From assembly GCA_000320545.1 (NCBI GenBank), contig ADNK01000646.1:1-33964 (forward strand): 33,964 bases of DNA, given 5' to 3'. Shown here piece by piece: positions 1,197 to 17,203 of the stretch. Position numbers and translations under genes: made by a program. How positions within the stretch are numbered: position 1 is the stretch's first letter; every line of letters starts with the position of its first letter. Source of the stretch: Bigelowiella natans CCMP2755. Its lineage: Eukaryota; Protista; Cercozoa. The notes beneath the pieces are model-generated. The model saw only the letters and a program-made list of their open reading frames with translations, was not told where the DNA came from and did not search any database.

Positions 1197-3134
1197 TCAA
1201 AGTGTGTTTCCAAATTTCAGCGTCACCTTCTTCTTCACCATGACACCTTTCTTCCCCACCAAAAACTTCAGCAATTTCGTCAACGCCTCAATGACTGTCT
1301 TCTCCTTCGGATAAATGCAAGGTGCAATCCTGTAAAGCATTTCAAGAAACTCTGGCCATTGCATCTCACTGTCTTCAGACATGAGCTCACCGTTAAATTG
1401 GGGTTCGATAGGCATGCAGTATGCCTTGTACGCTTCCCTGCGCTTCAACTCCGAGCCCTTTCCAAATAGCTCAATATCTTTAAGCCATGATGTGTATTCG
1501 TCTATGCTCATTGATGCTGTGGCAACGTCATCCTTTCGATCTTCCTCTGGCTTCATTCCTTCGTCTAGCATGGCAATTGGTAGAAAACATTTAGTGAAGA
1601 GTGACCTAAGAAATGGGTTGAAAGCGCGCTTAACTTCGAGCGTGTCCATTTCTCGGCGGAGACGAATAAACCCCTCCAGCAAACTCTTCTGCTTTGGCAA
1701 AATATGTTCCTCTATCAACCGTTTGAATCCCTCTCCTACTCCAATTTTGCGCCATTTTACCAAAGAAATTCTCACCAGAGCCTCGAGAAATTCAGACCGT
1801 ATGAACTGATTGCTCGGGTTGTCAGGGTCGCTTGAAATTTGCATTCCGCGCTTTAAATCTACGCCATCTAATTCTTCGTCGGAACCATAATCTTCATCGA
1901 CATTCACCCGAACAAAAATCTGTGAGACATTGGAAACTGTGAATTTCTTTGTGTATATCTTCAATTTCGCAATTAGGAGAGAGAATGTGCTCTGGTCCAT
2001 AAATGATATAGGAATCTTGAGGCAGGAATATGCCCTAAATATTTGCTGCAGGTCATTCCAATACTGGTAAAGTATCGTTTTCACATCTTTTCTGTCACTT
2101 GCTTGGGGAACGACATCGTTCAGTTGTATTTCTCGCCAATCGCGAGCAAATAAACTTTCAAATTCGTCGCCGGTGGGTACCCGAGGAATCTCATACTCCC
2201 AGAATATTTCTTCTTCTTTCTTTTTTGGTTTTTCTGTTGGCGTCCAACCATTGAAAGTATCCCACGGGTCTACTTCGATATCTGGGGCAACGAAGGAATC
2301 GGCAACATGTATCTCGTTCATTCGTTGTGGAGTGCCTTTTGCCCCGGTTGCAAATATTACATCGTAAATTGAGCTGACTTCCACAATTCCCTCGCCCACA
2401 AAGTAAAACCGAAGAGGAGAATATGGGGGTACTTTCAATCGGGCTGCCATCTTCCGACCTTTACGGACAAGGCTTAGGGACTCACTATATCCATTTACAT
2501 TAGTGAACATCCTGACAGCCTTAGCAGCCGCAACTTTCCCGTCATATATAATTGTGAAATCAATCCAATCATCTCGAGGCGTATTAGCTATAACTTGCCA
2601 CATGCTTCGAATATCATCCCCATTATGTCGTTTTAGCGTTACAACCACTCCTTTTTCTTGCACTTTCTCCAAATACTTAGATATCTTCCAATCAGGTTGG
2701 AGTATTTTTTTGGTTTCCCTGTCACGGGTCTCAAGAACCTCCAGTTCGTCGATTTTGAACTTGAAGCGCATATACGTGACGTATTTGAGCTTAGCTACAT
2801 TCGAAACCCACTTGAAGTCCTCGTCGGTCGAAGATAGTCGTAACTTGAACTTGATATCGCGAACCTCAACAGACAACATCCTTGCCTGTCCCGCAGTCCT
2901 CACTTGAGGAGCTGAGAGCTTAGGTCTTCGTCCCGATATAGACATCGACAAGAAGCTCTGGCCGAATCTGCAAGGAGCCAGCCTATTCGGCGGCAATCTC
3001 GTCCCAGGTGTGCCGATTTGCCTCTTGGTCCTGGAAGATTTTTGGGCGCCCTGCCTTTTGCTTTTACGATTGCCATTGCCGCCAACCCCCGATCCCTGGA
3101 TGGATAGGCGAGATTTGGACTGTAAACTTCGCAT
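1197..3134 (-). CDS. Intronless 645-aa protein of unknown function; possible Par3/HAL-N-like, degenerate CBM48-like and EF-hand-like helical segments
   Basis: Uninterrupted 1938-nt ORF with protein-like composition. Repeated helical motif RSEFLEALVRISLVKW / WPEFLEMLYRIA. Domain guesses are by eye only. Confidence 0.85.
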   Translation of the reverse strand: MRSLQSKSRLSIQGSGVGGNGNRKSKRQGAQKSSRTKRQIGTPGTRLPPNRLAPCRFGQSFLSMSISGRRPKLSAPQVRTAGQARMLSVEVRDIKFKLRLSSTDEDFKWVSNVAKLKYVTYMRFKFKIDELEVLETRDRETKKILQPDWKISKYLEKVQEKGVVVTLKRHNGDDIRSMWQVIANTPRDDWIDFTIIYDGKVAAAKAVRMFTNVNGYSESLSLVRKGRKMAARLKVPPYSPLRFYFVGEGIVEVSSIYDVIFATGAKGTPQRMNEIHVADSFVAPDIEVDPWDTFNGWTPTEKPKKKEEEIFWEYEIPRVPTGDEFESLFARDWREIQLNDVVPQASDRKDVKTILYQYWNDLQQIFRAYSCLKIPISFMDQSTFSLLIAKLKIYTKKFTVSNVSQIFVRVNVDEDYGSDEELDGVDLKRGMQISSDPDNPSNQFIRSEFLEALVRISLVKWRKIGVGEGFKRLIEEHILPKQKSLLEGFIRLRREMDTLEVKRAFNPFLRSLFTKCFLPIAMLDEGMKPEEDRKDDVATASMSIDEYTSWLKDIELFGKGSELKRREAYKAYCMPIEPQFNGELMSEDSEMQWPEFLEMLYRIAPCIYPKEKTVIEALTKLLKFLVGKKGVMVKKKVTLKFGNTL

Positions 3135-10111: not shown

Positions 10112-11986
10112 ATGGTTGTGACCTCATCTAAGCCGATAGCAGAGGCAAAGAACTACAATGGTAAAGCATTTCCACTGACCTATCGTCCAAAGGAAGAGGG
10201 CATGGGAGCTTTCCAGCTTTCGGAGTGGATCGCTAACAACAAGGAGGCAGTCAAGAAGAGTGTAATAATTACACCACCATTAGAAAAGAAAATATTGCTC
10301 CTATAGATCTATCGTAGCATTGTCGAATTTCTGGCAATTTTTCCAAATACAATTTGTCAATTTTATGCTCACTATCACCGCTCATAGGTGCAAGAGCATG
10401 GAGCTGTGCTGTTCAGAGGATTTGACCTCCGGTCTCCAGAAGAGCAGGTTGGTTTCTTCTTCTTCTTCTTCTTCTTCTTCTTCTTCTTCTTCTTCTTCTT
10501 CTTCTTCTTCTTCTTCTTCTTCTTCTTCTCTGATCGGCCAATAACCGAATCGCCCAGTCGAGTATACTCCAGATTCGTCGTCGTGCTCTTATCGTGTGCT
10601 GCTGCTGCAATCTATTTTATTAGGCAACGGTGATCATGTCGCTCGGCCTCAAACCCATGCCATACGTTGGAGGGGCTGCAGTCCGCAATAAAGTAGTTTG
10701 TAGCAGTAGTGCCACCTTGCAGCTGCGGAGTACTCGTCGAGAGAGTGTATGGCGGAGAATTTGCAGTGTGGCGAGCGAGTGTGTTGCATTATTCGCATGG
10801 AAATGATCTTCATTTGTCCTTCCGAACAACCCGTCTAAGCCGTAGGCATTTGAGCGCCATTGATAAGTTAGTTCAACGAAATTATAACCACCCTACAGGT
10901 TGTTGGAGATCTCATCATGACGACCAATGAATCGCCGCCCCAGGTACGTGCAAGCTATGGCTCTTTGAAGTATCGTAATAAACATATGGTACTAGTAATT
11001 TACCAAACATTATCACCATTATCATCATTAATCCCCATCGCTAAGATGGTAACTACACTTATTATAATTTTTTTCCTCACTTTCTTCACCAGGAGCCTAT
11101 TCCCTTCCATCATGAGATGGCGCAGTGTCCTGACCCTCCCTCCCACCTGGCCTTTATGTGCAGTATTCCAGGTTGTTTGTTTATCGACACGTAAACGTAC
11201 GTACAAACATGAACATGTTTAAGTATATAAAGTAAAATTCTCATCCTGACATTGTCTGCCCACCCCACCCCCTTGTCTGCCAAAGCTCAATCCGGAGGAG
11301 CTACCCCGATCCTGCGCTCCAATGCTGTTTACGAGTCAGTATATTCATTGATGGCTACGTTTTGCCTCATGTTTTTTGTGTGTGGTGCCACATGCGATAA
11401 TCTTACTTGCATGTTCTTCGTCACTCTCTTCCTCATCAGTATCATCATCGATATTAGGTTTCTCAACAAGAAGCATCCTGCTTTCTGCGCTAAGATGGAG
11501 AAGTTGGGAGTCAGGTGAAAGCAATCGAGCGTATTGTGACCTGATTGGGGAGGGAAGATAGAGGAGGGGGGGGGCTACTGCAGAGATTCTGTATCACTAC
11601 AAAAATAAAATGATGATTGAGGAAGAGCAGCCTGACCTTGAGCTTTTCTTCTCGATTAACATCCGCTCACTTATGACAACAACAACAGCAACAACAACAA
11701 CCACCACCACCACCGTTAGATACGTGCGTGTCATGCCCGGAGAGGACGATGCTAAATCTGCAATCGGAAGGTTCACAATGGAGGAGAGTTGCATAAGTGA
11801 TAATGATGACGATGACGATGATGATGATGAGGAGGGGGATGAGGGGCCATGGATATGTCGGTGAATTTGAATCTTGAAAGATGCTAGCAATACCAACCCA
11901 CTCCTTCGCATTGATGAAAGGAGCTGGAGGAACACGTTCAATGCTAAAACAAAGGGAGAAGCAGAGGTGCTGTGGTGATGGAGCTG

Positions 11987-12025
<39 letters not shown>

Positions 12026-12754
12026 CCTCCCTCCCTCCCTATCTTTCTCTCCTCTCCCCTCCCCTCCATCCTTAAGTCTCCAACCCGCATTGTGAGTGCC
12101 TGAACATCTGTTTGTGAGCGTTCTCAAGTTATCCCTCATCCTCTCCTTCATGTCCTTTCCCCGTTCCTTCAATTCTGCCCCCCCCCCCCCTTGCTCGCCC
12201 AGGAAGCAATGAAGAAGCTCGGAACGACCTGGGAGTGGCTCGAGAACGGCTGTGTCAAGACGACCACCTCCACCGTCCCCGCCATCCGTAGATGATGATG
12301 ATGATGACTAATACTAACATCAACATCCATGCGCGACGGCTTCTCCCAATTATGTATAAACGTGTGCGTGTGTGTGCGCGGCTTGCAATGGTCGTGAAAC
12401 AATGTGAGTGCGCAAGGGGGGATGTCTCGCAAAACACCATGCACCGCGACAAAAGGTAAGGATGAGAGGACGGGGCAAAAGATCTTCTTCAACTCTGTCG
12501 TAGCTGCCTTCACAGGTAGTACCGTGGACCCCTGAATGAATGAGTAACAGCGCACTCGGGACACACTGATCGATCGGCCCTCCATCCAATCTGCCTCCTG
12601 GATTACTGGAGGGGCATCGTCGTCAGATACAAATGATGGCGATGGTGATAATGGTGGTGATGCATGATGAGGATTCTGTATGTGCTTCATCACAGGGTGG
12701 GTTGACTCACGCAACGATCCTACCAAAGCCGTCCTCCTTGGAGATGGTCAGTAA

Positions 12755-12791
<37 letters not shown>

Positions 12792-13172
12792 CGTCGTCGT
12801 AGCAGCGGCACATGTGTAGTGGAAGTGGCAGCAGTAGCTGCATTGTAAAACAACGGTTACTGAGGGGGCGGGTAAGCAGTAATAATAGTTGCGGAGGTAG
12901 TAGTAGTAGCAGTAGCAGCTTTACAGTAGTTAGTGGTGCAAACGTAATCCATTTCCTCAAAGAACGGTGTGATGATGGGCAGGGAGCGCTGTGGATGCCG
13001 ACGCGCTGAAGGACGTCGCAGCGTTCATGGAAAAGGAGAAGGTATTGTCCATCGCTGTCTGCGCCTGTGTGTCACGAAGGAAGAACAAAGAGGAGGGTAT
13101 TGTTGCGAGGGAGAATTAAAGAAGAGTTGATGATGAAAAAGATTGATGATAGCACAAAAGAATATTATAAAT

Positions 13173-13221
<49 letters not shown>

Positions 13222-13301
13222 ATACATTTATAAAGGTGTCGTTTGCTTGGGAGAAAGGCGACGTGCTGGTTGTTGATAACTGGGTAGGTGCCACTTAAAC
13301 C

Positions 13302-13338
<37 letters not shown>

Positions 13339-13393
13339 TGTCGTCCATCGAAACAACGTCCTTCATCCATCGAAACAAGACCCTACTTTGTGC

Positions 13394-13438
<45 letters not shown>

Positions 13439-13561
13439 GTAGTGCTGAAGCTGCTGCTAGGCTACTGATGTTTTGTCCTGCGGCCGTTGTATGCATGATG
13501 AGCCAGCAGCAGCAGCATGATTTCCCTGTTTGTCAGCGAGTTTGTTATGTGCTCCTACCGC

Positions 13562-13605
<44 letters not shown>

Positions 13606-13823
13606 TGACGATGCACTCCCGACAGCCGTTCGAGGGGCCACGCAAAGTGCTCGCGTCGGTGTTTCGCGGCGATGATGCGGATGCTAAGGACCGCCCCGCA
13701 TACGCCATCCTCACCTCTGGTAGCAAAAATACAAATGGCAAAAAACAGCGACAGCAGCAGATAGCACTAGCAGCAGCAACATGAGACTCTTTGGGGGATG
13801 GAAAAGCCAGCCTTCATGTGTGT

Positions 13824-13862
<39 letters not shown>

Positions 13863-14612
13863 GATATACGGCTGTAGGCGATAAGATACCACTGGTAGGA
13901 CTGGGAATGTGGAAGATTCCGAAGGAAGCGTGCCCGAAGGTCCCGTAGAGAAGTTGTGGTGAGGGGGGGGGGGGGTGAGTTGAGGGGTTACTTTCATAAG
14001 CACACTTTGTGGATCATAAATCGATGATGCAGTTATCAACGAATTGAATGAAAGATCTATTTTATAGGTGGTCGTGGACGCCATCAAGGCTGGATATCGA
14101 TGCTTTGACAACGCCTGTGACTACGGTGGGGTGACCCATTTGTCCGCCGTGCCGTCAGCATTGTTCTCCCCCTCGTCCTCCTCCTCCTCCTCTAGCTGAA
14201 TCGTTGTTTTCTGATTTTATCATCTTGTGGTCATTCTCAGGGAACGAGGTGGAGGTGGGGAAGGGCATCTCAGATGCTCTCAAGAGTGGGATCATCACCA
14301 GGGAGAAGCTATGGGTTGCTTCCTAGCCTTCTCAGCGATCGTTTTTTTGGGACGATTCTATTTGTAGTTGTAGTATCTTGCAGTAGTTCCACTACCACTA
14401 CCGCAACTGCCACTCATTGCTGCTGCTTTTAGTGCCGCCGCTGCTGCTGTTTTCTGTCTCCTTATTAAAGCTGTAACTTCGTATAGATCACTTCCAAGCT
14501 GTGGAACACGTACCATGCTAAGGAGCACGTCAAGATGGCATGCCTCAAAACGCTGAAAGATCTAAACCTCAAGTACCTATCTATCTTCTGAAGATTCCTA
14601 CCATTGTTATTG

Positions 14613-14647
<35 letters not shown>

Positions 14648-16934
14648 CGTTCACTTTTTAATTGTATTCTTCCCTCCTCGTAGCGATGAGATCTTGTTGA
14701 GGGATCATCCTGCTTGCATTTGATGATGACAATGGTTGTAATGATGATGGTGGTGGTGATGATAGCGTTGGCAGCTAACACGGGGCTGCTGACCCAGCAT
14801 CATCCGATTTACCCATTCCCCCCCCCCCCAAACCTTCTCCCTCTCTTTCATCCCCTTCGCATGGCATGGTGTTGCTGACGACGACGTAAAATGGTGTTGG
14901 CAGGTACCTTGACCTTTACCTGATCCACTTCCCCATCGCCCAGAAGTACGTTCCCATCGAGAAACGGTAAGAACACGCGTCGTCGTCCACGCCTCAATCA
15001 TCAACATAACCGTGCACAAGCTTCCTTCGCCATTGATGAGAGACGGGCATGGATGATTGTTGGAGCCAGCCTGCATTATTATTTGGAAACGTCCATAAGC
15101 GGGAAATTGCTTCAGTCGTCGTCGTCGTCGTTGTCGTTGTCGTCGTTTCGTGCGGGCATGTCATCAAGTACGAAGCCGCGAGATGCTTGCTGATGTTGCT
15201 TATGCTGATGATGTGTTAGATACCCTCCGGAATGGAGCTACGATCCTGGTAGGGCCAGTAGGAGTAGTAGTAGTAGTAGTAGCAGCAGCAGCAGCAGCAG
15301 AATGGCAGTTTTGTGTGATTTGTGCGTGTGTGCACTATGTAGATATGCACACGTAATAAAGCTGCACCACTACCATCATCATCATCATCATCATCATCTT
15401 TTAAGACGATACTGGTTGCTCTACGGTGTGTCAGAGGAGAAGAAGGAATTCACCGAGTCGATCGTGCAAGTGCCCGTTCCCATTGCTGAAACATGGGCTG
15501 CGATGGAGGTGCTGTTTAGTGTTGCCTACTGGGGTGCATGCTCGCTGTGCTCAGCCAATTCTGATATAAAGATAATTTATATATATAATTATTTACAAAT
15601 ATATGAATAGACGCCCTTTCTAGGCGTATAATTGTCATCATCTACCATCTATTGTCACCATCATCATCATCATCATCATCATCAAAGTAGGCACACACGC
15701 ACACACACACGCACACACACACGCACACACACACACACATAGGAGCTGGTGAGCGAGGGGCTAGTCCGCAACATCGGTGTGGCCAACTTCAACTGCGCTC
15801 TGCTGCGGGAGCTGATGAAGACGGCAAAGATCAAGCCCGTTGTCAATCAGGTATCATTGTAAGGCGCATGGGACAGGGGGGGGGACGATGAGGCTTGCTC
15901 GTCTATCAGTATGCTTCATATGCAACCAATCGAATATTGTAGGTGGAGCTCCATCCGTATCTGACCCAGCCTAAGCTCGTTCGTTTCTGCCGTCGAAACG
16001 TAAGAAGGCGATTCTTTGATGTTGTTTGCCGCTGCTATCACGACACTGCTGCTGCTACTTTCCCACCATCAACTATACTGCACACTGAGCAAAAGCCTGA
16101 GCTAAATCCAATCATTACGCGCGATCGCAAAATCACATACACCCAGGGAATCCATATGACGGGGTTCAGCAACCTCGGGGCACCCTCTTACGTCGAGCTT
16201 GGAATGGCGACGAAGGCCGATTTCGTGCTTGATCAGAAGGTAGGAGAGGGGGGGCATTGTGCATGTATCTGTCGATGTAGTAGTTGCAGCGGAGATCGCA
16301 CATTCAAGAAGCAGCCGCTAATCACAGCATTTGTGATCCTCTCGTTTTCTTTTTTGATCCCCTCCATCCCCCACCGCCATGCAGTGTGTTGTGGAGATCG
16401 CGAAGGCGAAGAGTAGGACCCCAGCGCAGGTCAGTACTCCGTGTTGCTGCTAAAAGTTGTTCTGTTTTCCCGAATTTTATATAAAATACTTATTCACATT
16501 GAATTGTACCAAAAATTATCTCTCCCCCTCATCAGGTGGTGCTTCGTTGGCATCTGCAGCGTGGCACATCAATCATTCCAAAGACAACGAAGGTAAATGT
16601 TGTGTCGGTGTAGGCGCTAGTAGCGAGTGTAGCAAGAGGAGGAGTAATACGAGTAGCAATTGTGGTATCGGCAAGAGGAGGGGGCTTAGTAGTGCTGATG
16701 GCTTCTTCCAACAATCGGTCATCGGAAGGGTATAGAGCTTTCTTAGAAGTCTACGGTGTCATTCTACCTAACTAACGTATGGAATGGCCGTCGTAGGAAC
16801 ACCGCTTGAAAGAAAACATTGGCTTGTTCGACTTCTCGTTGACAAAGGAGGAGATGGAGAAGGTGTCAGCCCTGAACATTCACCGCCGATTCAATGATCC
16901 AGGAGTCTTCGCAGATATTCCAATTTACGACTAA
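10112..16934 (+). CDS. Fusion protein: N-terminal clavaminate-synthase-like/TauD-family Fe(II)/2OG dioxygenase + C-terminal aldo-keto reductase (xylose reductase/M6PR-like), 28 exons, ~650 aa
   Basis: N-half: [36 protein letters not shown] (H-x-E at 11108-11116), [70 protein letters not shown]-half: [92 protein letters not shown]. All 27 introns are GT-AG and in phase; the junction lies inside one exon (13605-13719) with no stop. Confidence 0.92.
10454..10528. repeat. (TTC)25 microsatellite in intron 2 of the fusion gene
   Basis: Perfect TTC run, read directly. Confidence 0.95.
13177..13603. repeat. Cluster of intronic microsatellites (TA)n(TG)n, (GAT)n, (GA)n, (AT)n around exon 14 of the fusion gene
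   Basis: Read directly; representative of dozens of SSRs in introns from 10.4 kb to the window end. Confidence 0.9.
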
Positions 16935-17203
16935 GACTGCAGAGGAAAATCAATCAAGCAGGGCATGTAGCACACGTGATCAGTGATGTTGCCGCTATCT
17001 GAACATCATTGGTATGAATATCGTGTCACATATCGATATACACATGGGTGCATGGTGCATGCATCGGACACCTTGTTGTCCATTAGTTATTGCTCTCACA
17101 TGTGCATGCCATGCTAATACATGCGATCTTGATGGCGATTTGTTGATGCAGCCACGAGCACAATAGTCGCAATGCAATGCAAACGCAATGCAAAGCAGGC
17201 ACG

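What the first reader, a model, noticed from the sequence alone, without database searches (positions are those of the whole stretch)
10112..16934. Hidden 28-exon fusion of an Fe(II)/2OG dioxygenase and a sugar aldo-keto reductase: candidate two-step oxidise-then-reduce enzyme
Seen: one reading frame is conserved across 27 GT-AG introns. Exon 13605-13719 carries the dioxygenase end ([19 protein letters not shown]), a short linker ([11 protein letters not shown]) and the AKR start (AYAILTSG) with no stop and no Met between the domains. Both active sites look intact: facial triad H-x-E (FHHEMA) plus distal H (MHSR) and a candidate 2OG-binding R; AKR tetrad D/Y (FDNACDY), K (TSKLW), H (LIHFP). 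Known: the N-half matches the clavaminate-synthase-like (At3g21360-type) TauD superfamily, and the C-half matches AKR2 xylose/mannose-6-P reductases; these are normally separate proteins. Inference: the dioxygenase may generate an aldehyde (by desulfonation, O-demethylation or dealkylation of a modified sugar) that the AKR reduces. This parallels bacterial oxygenolytic sulfoquinovose pathways, where an oxygenase yields 6-oxo-glucose and a reductase converts it to glucose. The fusion could hint at the substrate of a poorly characterised dioxygenase family. It is invisible in the ORF track.
Basis: partly seen in the sequence, partly recalled or inferred. Interest (0 to 1): 0.9.

Follow-up and report, generated by a model that had tools for sequence, protein, structure and literature searches.

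The report
Fused sulfoquinovose dioxygenase-aldehyde reductase gene
A 28-exon gene of a chlorarachniophyte alga encodes one protein joining a sulfoquinovose-type iron dioxygenase to an aldehyde reductase; it probably turns the abundant plant sulfosugar sulfoquinovose into glucose and sulfite, a route so far characterised only in bacteria.

Summary
Window 10112-16934 (+) holds 28 exons and 27 GT-AG introns, giving one 655-codon reading frame. Transcript contigs from three studies run through the junction exon, and one 2014-nt contig covers the whole coding sequence.

The N-half belongs to the SqoD/At3g21360 dioxygenase family. It keeps the iron triad and every sulfoquinovose-contacting residue of the crystallised bacterial sulfoquinovose dioxygenase except one (Val249 is Ala). 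The C-half is a xylose-reductase-type aldo-keto reductase (AKR) with an intact catalytic tetrad.

All 13 closest bacterial relatives of the N-half that I fetched have a SmoB-type 6-oxo-glucose reductase gene, directly adjacent in 12. Several also sit near sulfoquinovosidase, sugar-transporter or sulfite-reductase genes. The eukaryotic protein therefore fuses what bacteria keep as neighbouring genes, using a different AKR subfamily.

The fusion is not rare. At least 110 full-length fused proteins occur in chlorarachniophytes, diatoms, dinoflagellates, pelagophytes, labyrinthulids and others. They are mostly annotated "xylose reductase". I found no paper describing them, and a 2026 review states that no eukaryotic sulfoquinovose pathway has been characterised.

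Best reading (about 0.6): a one-polypeptide sulfoquinovose-to-glucose-plus-sulfite enzyme. Biochemistry is untested.

The parts
10112..16934 (+). Whole coding span: 28 exons, 27 GT-AG introns, 655 codons plus stop (exon list in the Full report section)
10112..13664 (+). Exons 1-15 (first part): SqoD/At3g21360-type Fe(II)/2-oxoglutarate dioxygenase domain, aa 1-323
13605..13719 (+). Exon 15, the junction exon: dioxygenase end, linker and AKR start in one open exon
13665..13697 (+). 11-residue interdomain linker (aa 324-334)
   Evidence: bacterial and plant homologues end here
13698..16934 (+). Exons 15 (last part) to 28: AKR2/xylose-reductase-type aldo-keto reductase domain, aa 335-655
11108..11116 (+). 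Iron ligands His114 and Glu116 (MaSqoD His115, Glu117)
13614..13616 (+). Distal iron ligand His307 (MaSqoD His308); Arg316 lies at 13641-13643
11123..11125 (+). Gln119, equivalent of the sulfonate-binding Gln120 of MaSqoD
12698..12700 (+). Trp252, equivalent of Trp253 of MaSqoD (binds C1-OH and C2-OH of sulfoquinovose)
10675..10686 (+). Lid-loop residues Ala88, Ala89, Arg91 (MaSqoD Ala89, Ala90, Arg92)
14107..14124 (+). AKR catalytic Asp376 and Tyr381
14496..14498 (+). AKR catalytic Lys410
14926..14928 (+). AKR catalytic His443
12288..12455 (+). Intron 10, retained in some transcript contigs; retention meets a stop at 12293-12295
   Evidence: (X1 record 2, X7 record 7)

Best explanation
The gene encodes a 655-residue, probably cytosolic, bifunctional enzyme. 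Step 1, inferred from family membership and pocket conservation: the N-terminal Fe(II)/2-oxoglutarate dioxygenase hydroxylates C6 of sulfoquinovose. The alpha-hydroxysulfonate then collapses to sulfite and 6-dehydroglucose (6-oxo-glucose), with succinate and CO2 as co-products. Step 2, inferred from the fusion and from the bacterial gene pairing: the C-terminal NAD(P)H-dependent aldo-keto reductase reduces the C6 aldehyde to glucose. The protein would thus be the core of the bacterial sulfo-SDO/sulfo-ASDO pathway in one polypeptide. It could let the alga, and the many protists with the same fusion, recover carbon and sulfur from the sulfolipid SQDG. Shown here: the gene structure, the single transcript, domain identities, intact catalytic residues, the wide distribution of the fusion and the bacterial gene neighbourhoods. 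Inferred: the substrate, both reactions and the physiological role.
For: Single mRNA: one 2014-nt contig colinear with all checked exons, and contigs from three studies across the junction. Family: exon 5 hits only MaSqoD (9yut, E 1.1e-5) and At3g21360 (1y0z) in the PDB. The N-half of the 82%-identical orthologue gives E 1.2e-90 to MaSqoD and 1.6e-91 to At3g21360. Pocket: all MaSqoD ligand contacts listed in PMC12951627 are matched in the window protein except Val249, which is Ala. The iron triad, Arg316, Ala89, Arg91, Gln119 and Trp252 (window numbering) are invariant in 110 fused proteins. Bacterial gene pairing: 13 of 13 bacterial relatives (48-55% identity) have a SmoB-like AKR, 12 of them directly adjacent on the same strand. 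The best PDB hit of the L023 neighbour is SmoB, the 6-oxo-glucose reductase (7bby, E 8e-81). Neighbourhoods include a YihQ-type sulfoquinovosidase (L026, E 1.5e-212 to 5aed), GH31 genes, MFS sugar transporters, a Gfo/Idh/MocA gene that hits SqgA at E 4.5e-20, and sulfite reductase plus sirohaem synthase. The AKR tetrad is conserved in 109-110 of the 110 fused proteins. The AlphaFold model of the orthologue has pLDDT 92.7 and pTM 0.89, which indicates a defined two-domain arrangement. The same genome holds a YihQ-type sulfoquinovosidase candidate that keeps the Arg and Trp of the sulfonate-recognition triad.
Against: No biochemistry exists for any fused member. The pocket residues are also conserved in plant At3g21360, whose substrate is unknown, so they mark the family rather than prove the substrate. 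The AKR half is xylose-reductase-type, only 23-25% identical to the SmoB-like bacterial partners, and SmoB is absent from its best 60 PDB matches. Its preference for a C6 aldehyde is therefore untested. Met118 is Leu in about half of the fused proteins, and Ala185 is Pro in 44 of 110; both are backbone contacts only. A bacterial SqgA-like query found nothing in this genome. An internal promoter giving an additional AKR-only transcript cannot be excluded from assembled contigs. The spliced model itself was not sent to any search tool.
Confidence: 0.6

Rival explanations
1. The two domains are coupled as proposed (oxidative cleavage to an aldehyde, then reduction), but the physiological substrate is not free sulfoquinovose. 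It could be sulfoquinovosyl glycerol, another sulfonated or modified sugar, or the still unknown substrate of plant At3g21360.
For: The family includes At3g21360, of unknown function. The pocket differs from MaSqoD at Val249 (Ala in all 212 homologues checked), and many fused proteins differ at Met118 and Ala185. The AKR partner belongs to a different subfamily from the bacterial reductase.
Against: Both side chains that read the sulfonate and the C1/C2 hydroxyls are invariant. The nearest bacterial relatives sit in clusters with genuine sulfoquinovosidases and SmoB-type reductases.
Confidence: 0.22
2. The two domains act independently, an aldose or xylose reductase and a separate dioxygenase. 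In this reading the fusion only ensures co-expression and no intermediate is shared.
For: The AKR half is 44-45% identical to fungal xylose reductases, with TM 0.97. Databases name the fused proteins xylose reductase.
Against: Independent pairing of the same dioxygenase family with an AKR in 13 of 13 bacterial loci argues for a shared pathway. So does the fixed order, short linker and both active sites being kept in 110 fused proteins, and the confident domain packing (pTM 0.89).
Confidence: 0.1
3. The fusion is an artefact: two adjacent genes joined by a wrong model, read-through or chimeric transcript assembly.
For: Assembled contigs cannot show transcript starts or ends. The raw-read run gave only 58 reads, mostly at the 3' end.
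Against: There is no intergenic space, because both domain ends lie inside one 115-nt exon with no stop codon. Three studies bridge it. Transcriptome-derived full-length fused orthologues exist in many lineages.
Confidence: 0.02

Closest known systems
SqoD, Fe(II)/2-oxoglutarate sulfoquinovose dioxygenase of Marinobacterium aestuarii (PDB 9yut-9yux; PMC10507154, PMC12951627)
   Same: Same family: E 1.2e-90 for the 82%-identical orthologue, and best PDB hit of exon 5. Same iron triad. Same sulfoquinovose contacts (Gln120, Trp253, Ala89/Ala90, Arg92, Ala185, Ile186). Same C-terminal end point.
   Different: SqoD is a stand-alone bacterial protein whose reductase partner SquF is a separate gene. 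Here the domain is N-terminal in a fusion, Val249 is Ala, and the gene is eukaryotic with 27 introns.
Arabidopsis At3g21360, clavaminate-synthase-like protein (PDB 1Y0Z/2Q4A)
   Same: Equally close in sequence and fold: E 1.6e-91, and Foldseek TM 0.96 at 44% identity for the orthologue model. Same pocket residues.
   Different: It is stand-alone and its function is unknown. It has no fused reductase.
SmoB/SquF, NADPH-dependent 6-oxo-glucose reductase (PDB 7BBY-7BC1; PMC8795539)
   Same: Same predicted reaction (6-dehydroglucose to glucose), same superfamily and the same Asp/Tyr/Lys/His tetrad. SmoB-like genes flank the bacterial relatives of the N-half.
   Different: It belongs to a different AKR subfamily: 23-25% identity, and SmoB is not among the best 60 PDB matches of the C-half. 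The window protein works like SmoB but is not a member of that family.
Fungal xylose reductases, AKR2B (Candida tenuis 1JEZ/1K8C, Debaryomyces 5ZCI)
   Same: Closest solved relatives of the C-half: E 8e-87 to 2e-83, 44-45% identity and TM 0.94-0.97 for the orthologue.
   Different: These are stand-alone and reduce C1 of xylose. Here the domain starts without its own Met directly after a dioxygenase, and it is predicted to reduce a C6 aldehyde.
Bacterial sulfo-SDO (sulfo-ASDO) gene clusters
   Same: Same two-enzyme logic. The relatives fetched here (L017-L029) combine a SqoD-like gene and an AKR with a sulfoquinovosidase, a transporter or a sulfite reductase.
   Different: They are separate genes in operons, whereas the window has one intron-rich eukaryotic gene. 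The candidate sulfoquinovosidase of this genome lies on another contig.

Membership tests
TauD/TfdA Fe(II)/2-oxoglutarate dioxygenases (PF02668) | His-x-Asp/Glu ... His iron triad and 2-oxoglutarate-binding Arg | tested here: met
   His114, Glu116 and His307 align with the MaSqoD triad, and Arg316 is conserved
TauD/TfdA Fe(II)/2-oxoglutarate dioxygenases (PF02668) | Profile score above the Pfam cut-off | tested here: inconclusive
   Single exons are too short: the best is exon 2 at 14.5 bits against a cut-off of 27, and the genome scan missed the window. The 82%-identical orthologue scores 120.5 bits. The joined model was not scanned.
SqoD sulfoquinovose dioxygenase family | Full-length similarity to a characterised SqoD | tested here: met
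   Orthologue N-half against 9yut gives E 1.2e-90 over residues 10-322. Exons 5, 12 and 15 each hit only 9yut and 1y0z.
SqoD sulfoquinovose dioxygenase family | Sulfoquinovose-contact residues (Gln120, Trp253, Ala89/90, Met118, Ala185, Ile186, Arg92) | tested here: met
   All are identical in the window protein; the flanking Val249 is Ala
SqoD sulfoquinovose dioxygenase family | Association with a 6-dehydroglucose reductase and sulfoquinovose-release genes | tested here: met
   Fused to an AKR here. Bacterial relatives are adjacent to a SmoB-like AKR in 12 of 13 loci, with YihQ-type SQase, GH31 and MFS genes nearby.
SqoD sulfoquinovose dioxygenase family | Sulfoquinovose-dependent sulfite release and succinate formation | not testable with these tools
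   Needs an enzyme assay
Aldo-keto reductase superfamily (PF00248) | Profile score above the cut-off and the Asp/Tyr/Lys/His tetrad | tested here: met
   Exon 23 alone scores 29.3 bits against a cut-off of 24. Asp376, Tyr381, Lys410 and His443 are present, and are conserved in 109-110 of 110 fused proteins.
AKR2-type xylose reductases | Closest sequence and fold relatives | tested here: met
   Orthologue C-half: 5zci E 8.4e-87, 1jez E 1.9e-83; Foldseek TM 0.94-0.97. Xylose reductase activity itself was not tested.
SmoB/SquF 6-oxo-glucose reductases | Sequence membership in the SmoB/YdhF-like AKR group | tested here: not met
   23-25% identity to SmoB-like neighbours. SmoB is not among the best 60 PDB hits of the C-half, whereas the bacterial neighbour hits SmoB at E 8e-81.

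The most novel reading that the evidence does not exclude
This fusion family is the first sulfoquinovose-degrading (sulfolytic) enzyme of eukaryotes. It would be a single polypeptide that converts sulfoquinovose to glucose and sulfite, and it is widespread in marine phytoplankton and in heterotrophic protists. It would supply the missing step after the algal sulfoquinovosidases already reported. It would also explain how algae recycle sulfolipid sulfur, and it implies that the plant At3g21360 family has the same activity.
Probability: 0.5. Interest if true: 0.85.

Novelty: new variant of a known kind. Interest (0 to 1): 0.78.

Why it matters
Sulfoquinovose is made on a scale of about 10 billion tonnes a year. 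A January 2026 review states that all known degradation pathways are bacterial and that none is characterised in eukaryotes (PMC12890257). Algal sulfoquinovosidases have been reported (PMC12780224, PMC13436972), but the fate of the released sugar in algae is open. A fused SqoD-type dioxygenase and reductase, present in diatoms, dinoflagellates, pelagophytes, chlorarachniophytes and labyrinthulids, would make that question directly testable with one recombinant protein. It would also change carbon and sulfur budgets that currently assign sulfoquinovose turnover to bacteria alone. It would correct hundreds of "xylose reductase" annotations, and it gives a concrete substrate hypothesis for the orphan plant protein At3g21360.

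Tried and rejected
All later scripts used coordinates only.
- The junction exon (38 aa) searched against 1.84 billion representatives gave one meaningless low-complexity hit. The query was too short, so this says nothing about absence.
- Pfam on single exons was nearly blind for the dioxygenase half, and the genome-wide PF02668 scan missed the window.
A stop-free 49-aa frame around exon 5 worked.
- The raw-read run X21 gave only 58 reads, mostly at the 3' end, so transcript starts and ends remain unknown.
- The joint 11514 to 11918 with GT..GA ends is not exon skipping. Exon 8 lies in a masked repeat, and the contig arithmetic shows its 51 nt are present.
- The long open frame upstream of the L029 gene looked like a possible bacterial fusion. 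The AKR lies in another frame, and its stop overlaps the dioxygenase start.
- A bacterial SqgA-like query found nothing in this genome.
- Midpoint rooting of the N-domain tree was uninformative. An unrooted split was used instead.
- NCBIfam has no model for this dioxygenase family.
- I considered complex prediction for a domain-domain interface but did not run it, because no binding claim depends on it.


Full report
**Gene structure**

The region is intron-rich eukaryotic DNA with microsatellites in many introns. I took reading-frame segments from a three-frame translation and fixed the boundaries with RNA evidence. The resulting model has 28 exons:

10112-10261, 10388-10447, 10624-10692, 10899-10943, 11093-11171, 11286-11334, 11458-11514, 11720-11770, 11921-11966, 12203-12287, 12456-12515, 12696-12746, 12983-13041, 13236-13283, 13605-13719, 13878-13939, 14068-14125, 14241-14314, 14487-14572, 14904-14966, 15220-15248, 15435-15508, 15743-15850, 15943-15999, 16147-16239, 16385-16429, 16536-16592, 16797-16934.

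- All 27 introns are GT..AG, 92-331 nt long.
- The CDS is 1968 nt, giving 655 aa.
- An in-frame stop lies 66 nt upstream of the ATG.

**One transcript**

The look-up of sequencing runs returned about 20 transcriptome-like runs of one organism. They hold roughly 0.2 of the sampled words, which is the share expected for spliced exons.

I laid four runs on 10950-16949.
- Run X2 has a single 2014-nt contig (depth 160) with pieces in exons 5, 10, 15, 19, 23, 25 and 28.
- The offset between contig position and model position is 16 at every checked exon from 5 to 28. The contig is therefore exactly the spliced model plus a 16-nt leader.
- X1 (1379 nt) and X7 (1572 nt), from two further studies, also run from exon 10 or 11 through the junction exon to the 3' end.
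- Fifteen joints are listed directly. Those hidden by masked repeats follow from the arithmetic.
- Intron 10 is retained in some contigs.
- The raw-read run was too thin and too 3'-biased to define transcript ends.

**How the spliced model was handled**

Exons were searched by reference. Full-length comparisons were made in two ways. One was inside scripts that build the model from window coordinates and compare it with sequences the tools had fetched. The other used a natural proxy: P0031, a 655-aa protein of chlorarachniophyte strain BC52. P0031 is 82% identical to the model over all 655 residues without a gap. It recovers at least 20 exons in colinear order in the genome, and shows no second copy of the N-half.

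**The N-half**

Exon-level PDB searches:
- Exon 5 matches only two PDB sequences: 9yut and 1y0z. 9yut is the Marinobacterium aestuarii sulfoquinovose dioxygenase MaSqoD, identified by its residue pattern and the 2026 paper. 1y0z is At3g21360.
- Exons 12 and 15 behave the same way.

Full-length comparison:
- The proxy N-half gives E 1.6e-91 to At3g21360 and 1.2e-90 to MaSqoD.
- The paper notes that At3g21360 is the closest structural relative of MaSqoD.

Residue mapping:
- I mapped the residues described for the sulfoquinovose complex through these alignments.
- Window numbering: iron triad His114, Glu116, His307; Gln119 (sulfonate); Trp252 (C1/C2 hydroxyls); Ala88, Ala89 and Arg91 (lid loop); Met117; Ala184; Ile185.
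- All are identical to MaSqoD. Only Val249 is Ala.
- In 110 fused proteins the triad, Arg316, Gln119, Trp252, Ala89 and Arg91 are invariant.

The domain ends exactly where the bacterial and plant proteins end. There is no N-terminal extension, which suggests a cytosolic protein (inference).

**The C-half**

- Exon 23 alone passes the Pfam AKR cut-off.
- The best solved relatives of the proxy C-half are fungal xylose reductases (E 8e-87 to 2e-83).
- Foldseek on the AlphaFold model gives TM 0.94-0.97.
- The catalytic tetrad Asp376/Tyr381/Lys410/His443 is present in the window protein. In the 110 fused proteins Asp, Tyr and Lys are invariant and His is conserved in 109.
- The full-length model of the orthologue has pLDDT 92.7 and pTM 0.89. 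A score that high for a two-domain chain implies a defined mutual orientation.

**Bacterial relatives**

A pattern search seeded from the exon-5 frame fetched 13 bacterial loci, from Myxococcota, Gammaproteobacteria and Hydrogenedentes MAGs. Their stand-alone proteins of about 325 aa are 48-55% identical to the whole N-half.

- Every locus has an AKR gene, and in 12 it directly abuts the dioxygenase gene on the same strand, in either order.
- The best PDB match of the L023 neighbour is SmoB, the characterised 6-oxo-glucose reductase (E 8e-81).
- L019 and L023 continue with a Gfo/Idh/MocA gene and an MFS sugar transporter. The second-best PDB hit of the L023 Gfo/Idh/MocA gene is the NAD-dependent sulfoquinovosidase SqgA.
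- L026 holds the closest relative. It has an MFS_2 transporter and a GH31 enzyme that matches E. coli sulfoquinovosidase YihQ at E 1.5e-212 and passes the NCBIfam equivalog cut-off.
- L022 and L025 also carry GH31 genes. L022 adds sulfite reductase and sirohaem synthase.

The nearest bacterial kin are therefore embedded in sulfoquinovose-type catabolic clusters, and the dioxygenase-plus-AKR pairing recurs there. The eukaryotic fusion pairs the same dioxygenase family with a different AKR subfamily (23-25% identity). That points to a need for an aldehyde reductase as such, rather than to shared ancestry of the pair.

**Distribution**

A search with a stop-free bacterial frame long enough to admit 650-aa candidates found 16 fused proteins among the best 120 hits. 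A search with P0031 gave 415 proteins at E 1e-30 or better, and all of the best 120 carry PF02668 plus PF00248.

The 110 full-length fused proteins are 597-788 aa long, always with the dioxygenase first. Named sources:
- Chlorarachniophytes (strain BC52, labelled Norrisiella in its source record, and Amorphochlora)
- The dinoflagellate Durusdinium
- Diatoms (Seminavis, Epithemia, Craspedostauros, Helicotheca)
- Pelagophytes (Aureoumbra, Chrysophaeum)
- Octactis
- A cryptophyte
- The kinetoplastid Neobodo
- Labyrinthulids (Schizochytrium, Mucochytrium)

Source annotations read "D-xylose reductase", "NADP-dependent oxidoreductase domain-containing protein" or similar.

In an N-domain tree, one branch (support 95) puts all 111 fused rows plus six short stand-alone or truncated rows on one side, and the other 109 stand-alone rows on the other. 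This is compatible with one origin of the fusion, but the tree is unrooted.

**Context in this genome**

A multi-exon GH31 gene on contig C1451 matches the bacterial sulfoquinovosidase at 39-54% identity per exon. One of its exons hits only the sulfoquinovosidase subgroup of GH31 in the PDB. That exon keeps the Arg and Trp of the sulfonate-recognition triad described for SmoI.

**Literature**

I found no paper describing this fusion or a eukaryotic SqoD. A 2026 review states that no sulfoquinovose pathway is characterised in eukaryotes. Others report algal sulfoquinovosidases and suggest self-recycling of sulfolipid.

**Verdict**

The fusion is real, expressed, conserved and widespread. The most likely function is sulfoquinovose to glucose plus sulfite in one enzyme (about 0.6). 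The main uncertainty is the substrate, because the orphan plant homologue shares the same pocket and no fused member has been assayed.

Noticed in passing
window 12288-12455: Intron 10 is retained in contigs of two studies (X1 record 2, X7 record 7). Read-through reaches a stop at 12293-12295, which would truncate the dioxygenase before its distal His.
   Followed up: partly
window 12459: All three transcriptome studies read C where the assembly has A. This changes codon 232 from Lys to Thr. It could be a strain difference, an assembly error or editing.
   Followed up: no
window 16000-16146: Intron 24 is 147 nt (49 codons) with no in-frame stop, so the only long ORF of the region (15943-16416, 157 aa) is exon 24, intron 24 and exon 25 read together. 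Retention of this intron would keep the frame.
   Followed up: no
window 13562-13603 and 15692-15739: Fourteen microsatellite arrays lie in the introns of this gene. An (AT)n array ends at the acceptor of the junction exon, and a (CA)n array ends three bases before the acceptor AG of exon 23.
   Followed up: no
window 1197-3134 (-): An intronless 645-aa ORF with no Pfam family. Six other ORFs of 165-224 aa in the window also had no Pfam hit.
   Followed up: partly
G000:C1451:146887-149206 (L031, L032): A multi-exon GH31 gene resembles YihQ-type sulfoquinovosidases. One exon hits only sulfoquinovosidases in the PDB and keeps the Arg and Trp of the sulfonate triad.
   Followed up: partly
L023 4793-6715; L025 2648-4729: A DUF3604 gene lies upstream of the dioxygenase-AKR pair: about 0.9 kb away in the gammaproteobacterial locus L023 and about 1.9 kb away in the Myxococcota locus L025. 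It may be an unrecognised member of these clusters.
   Followed up: no
L022 9581-12558 (-): Sirohaem synthase and a sulfite/nitrite reductase lie about 0.9 kb beyond the AKR-dioxygenase pair, after one 287-aa ORF with no Pfam hit. This fits assimilation of released sulfite.
   Followed up: no
G000:C1142:42296-43927 (-): A 794-aa open frame with two tandem AKR domains.
   Followed up: no
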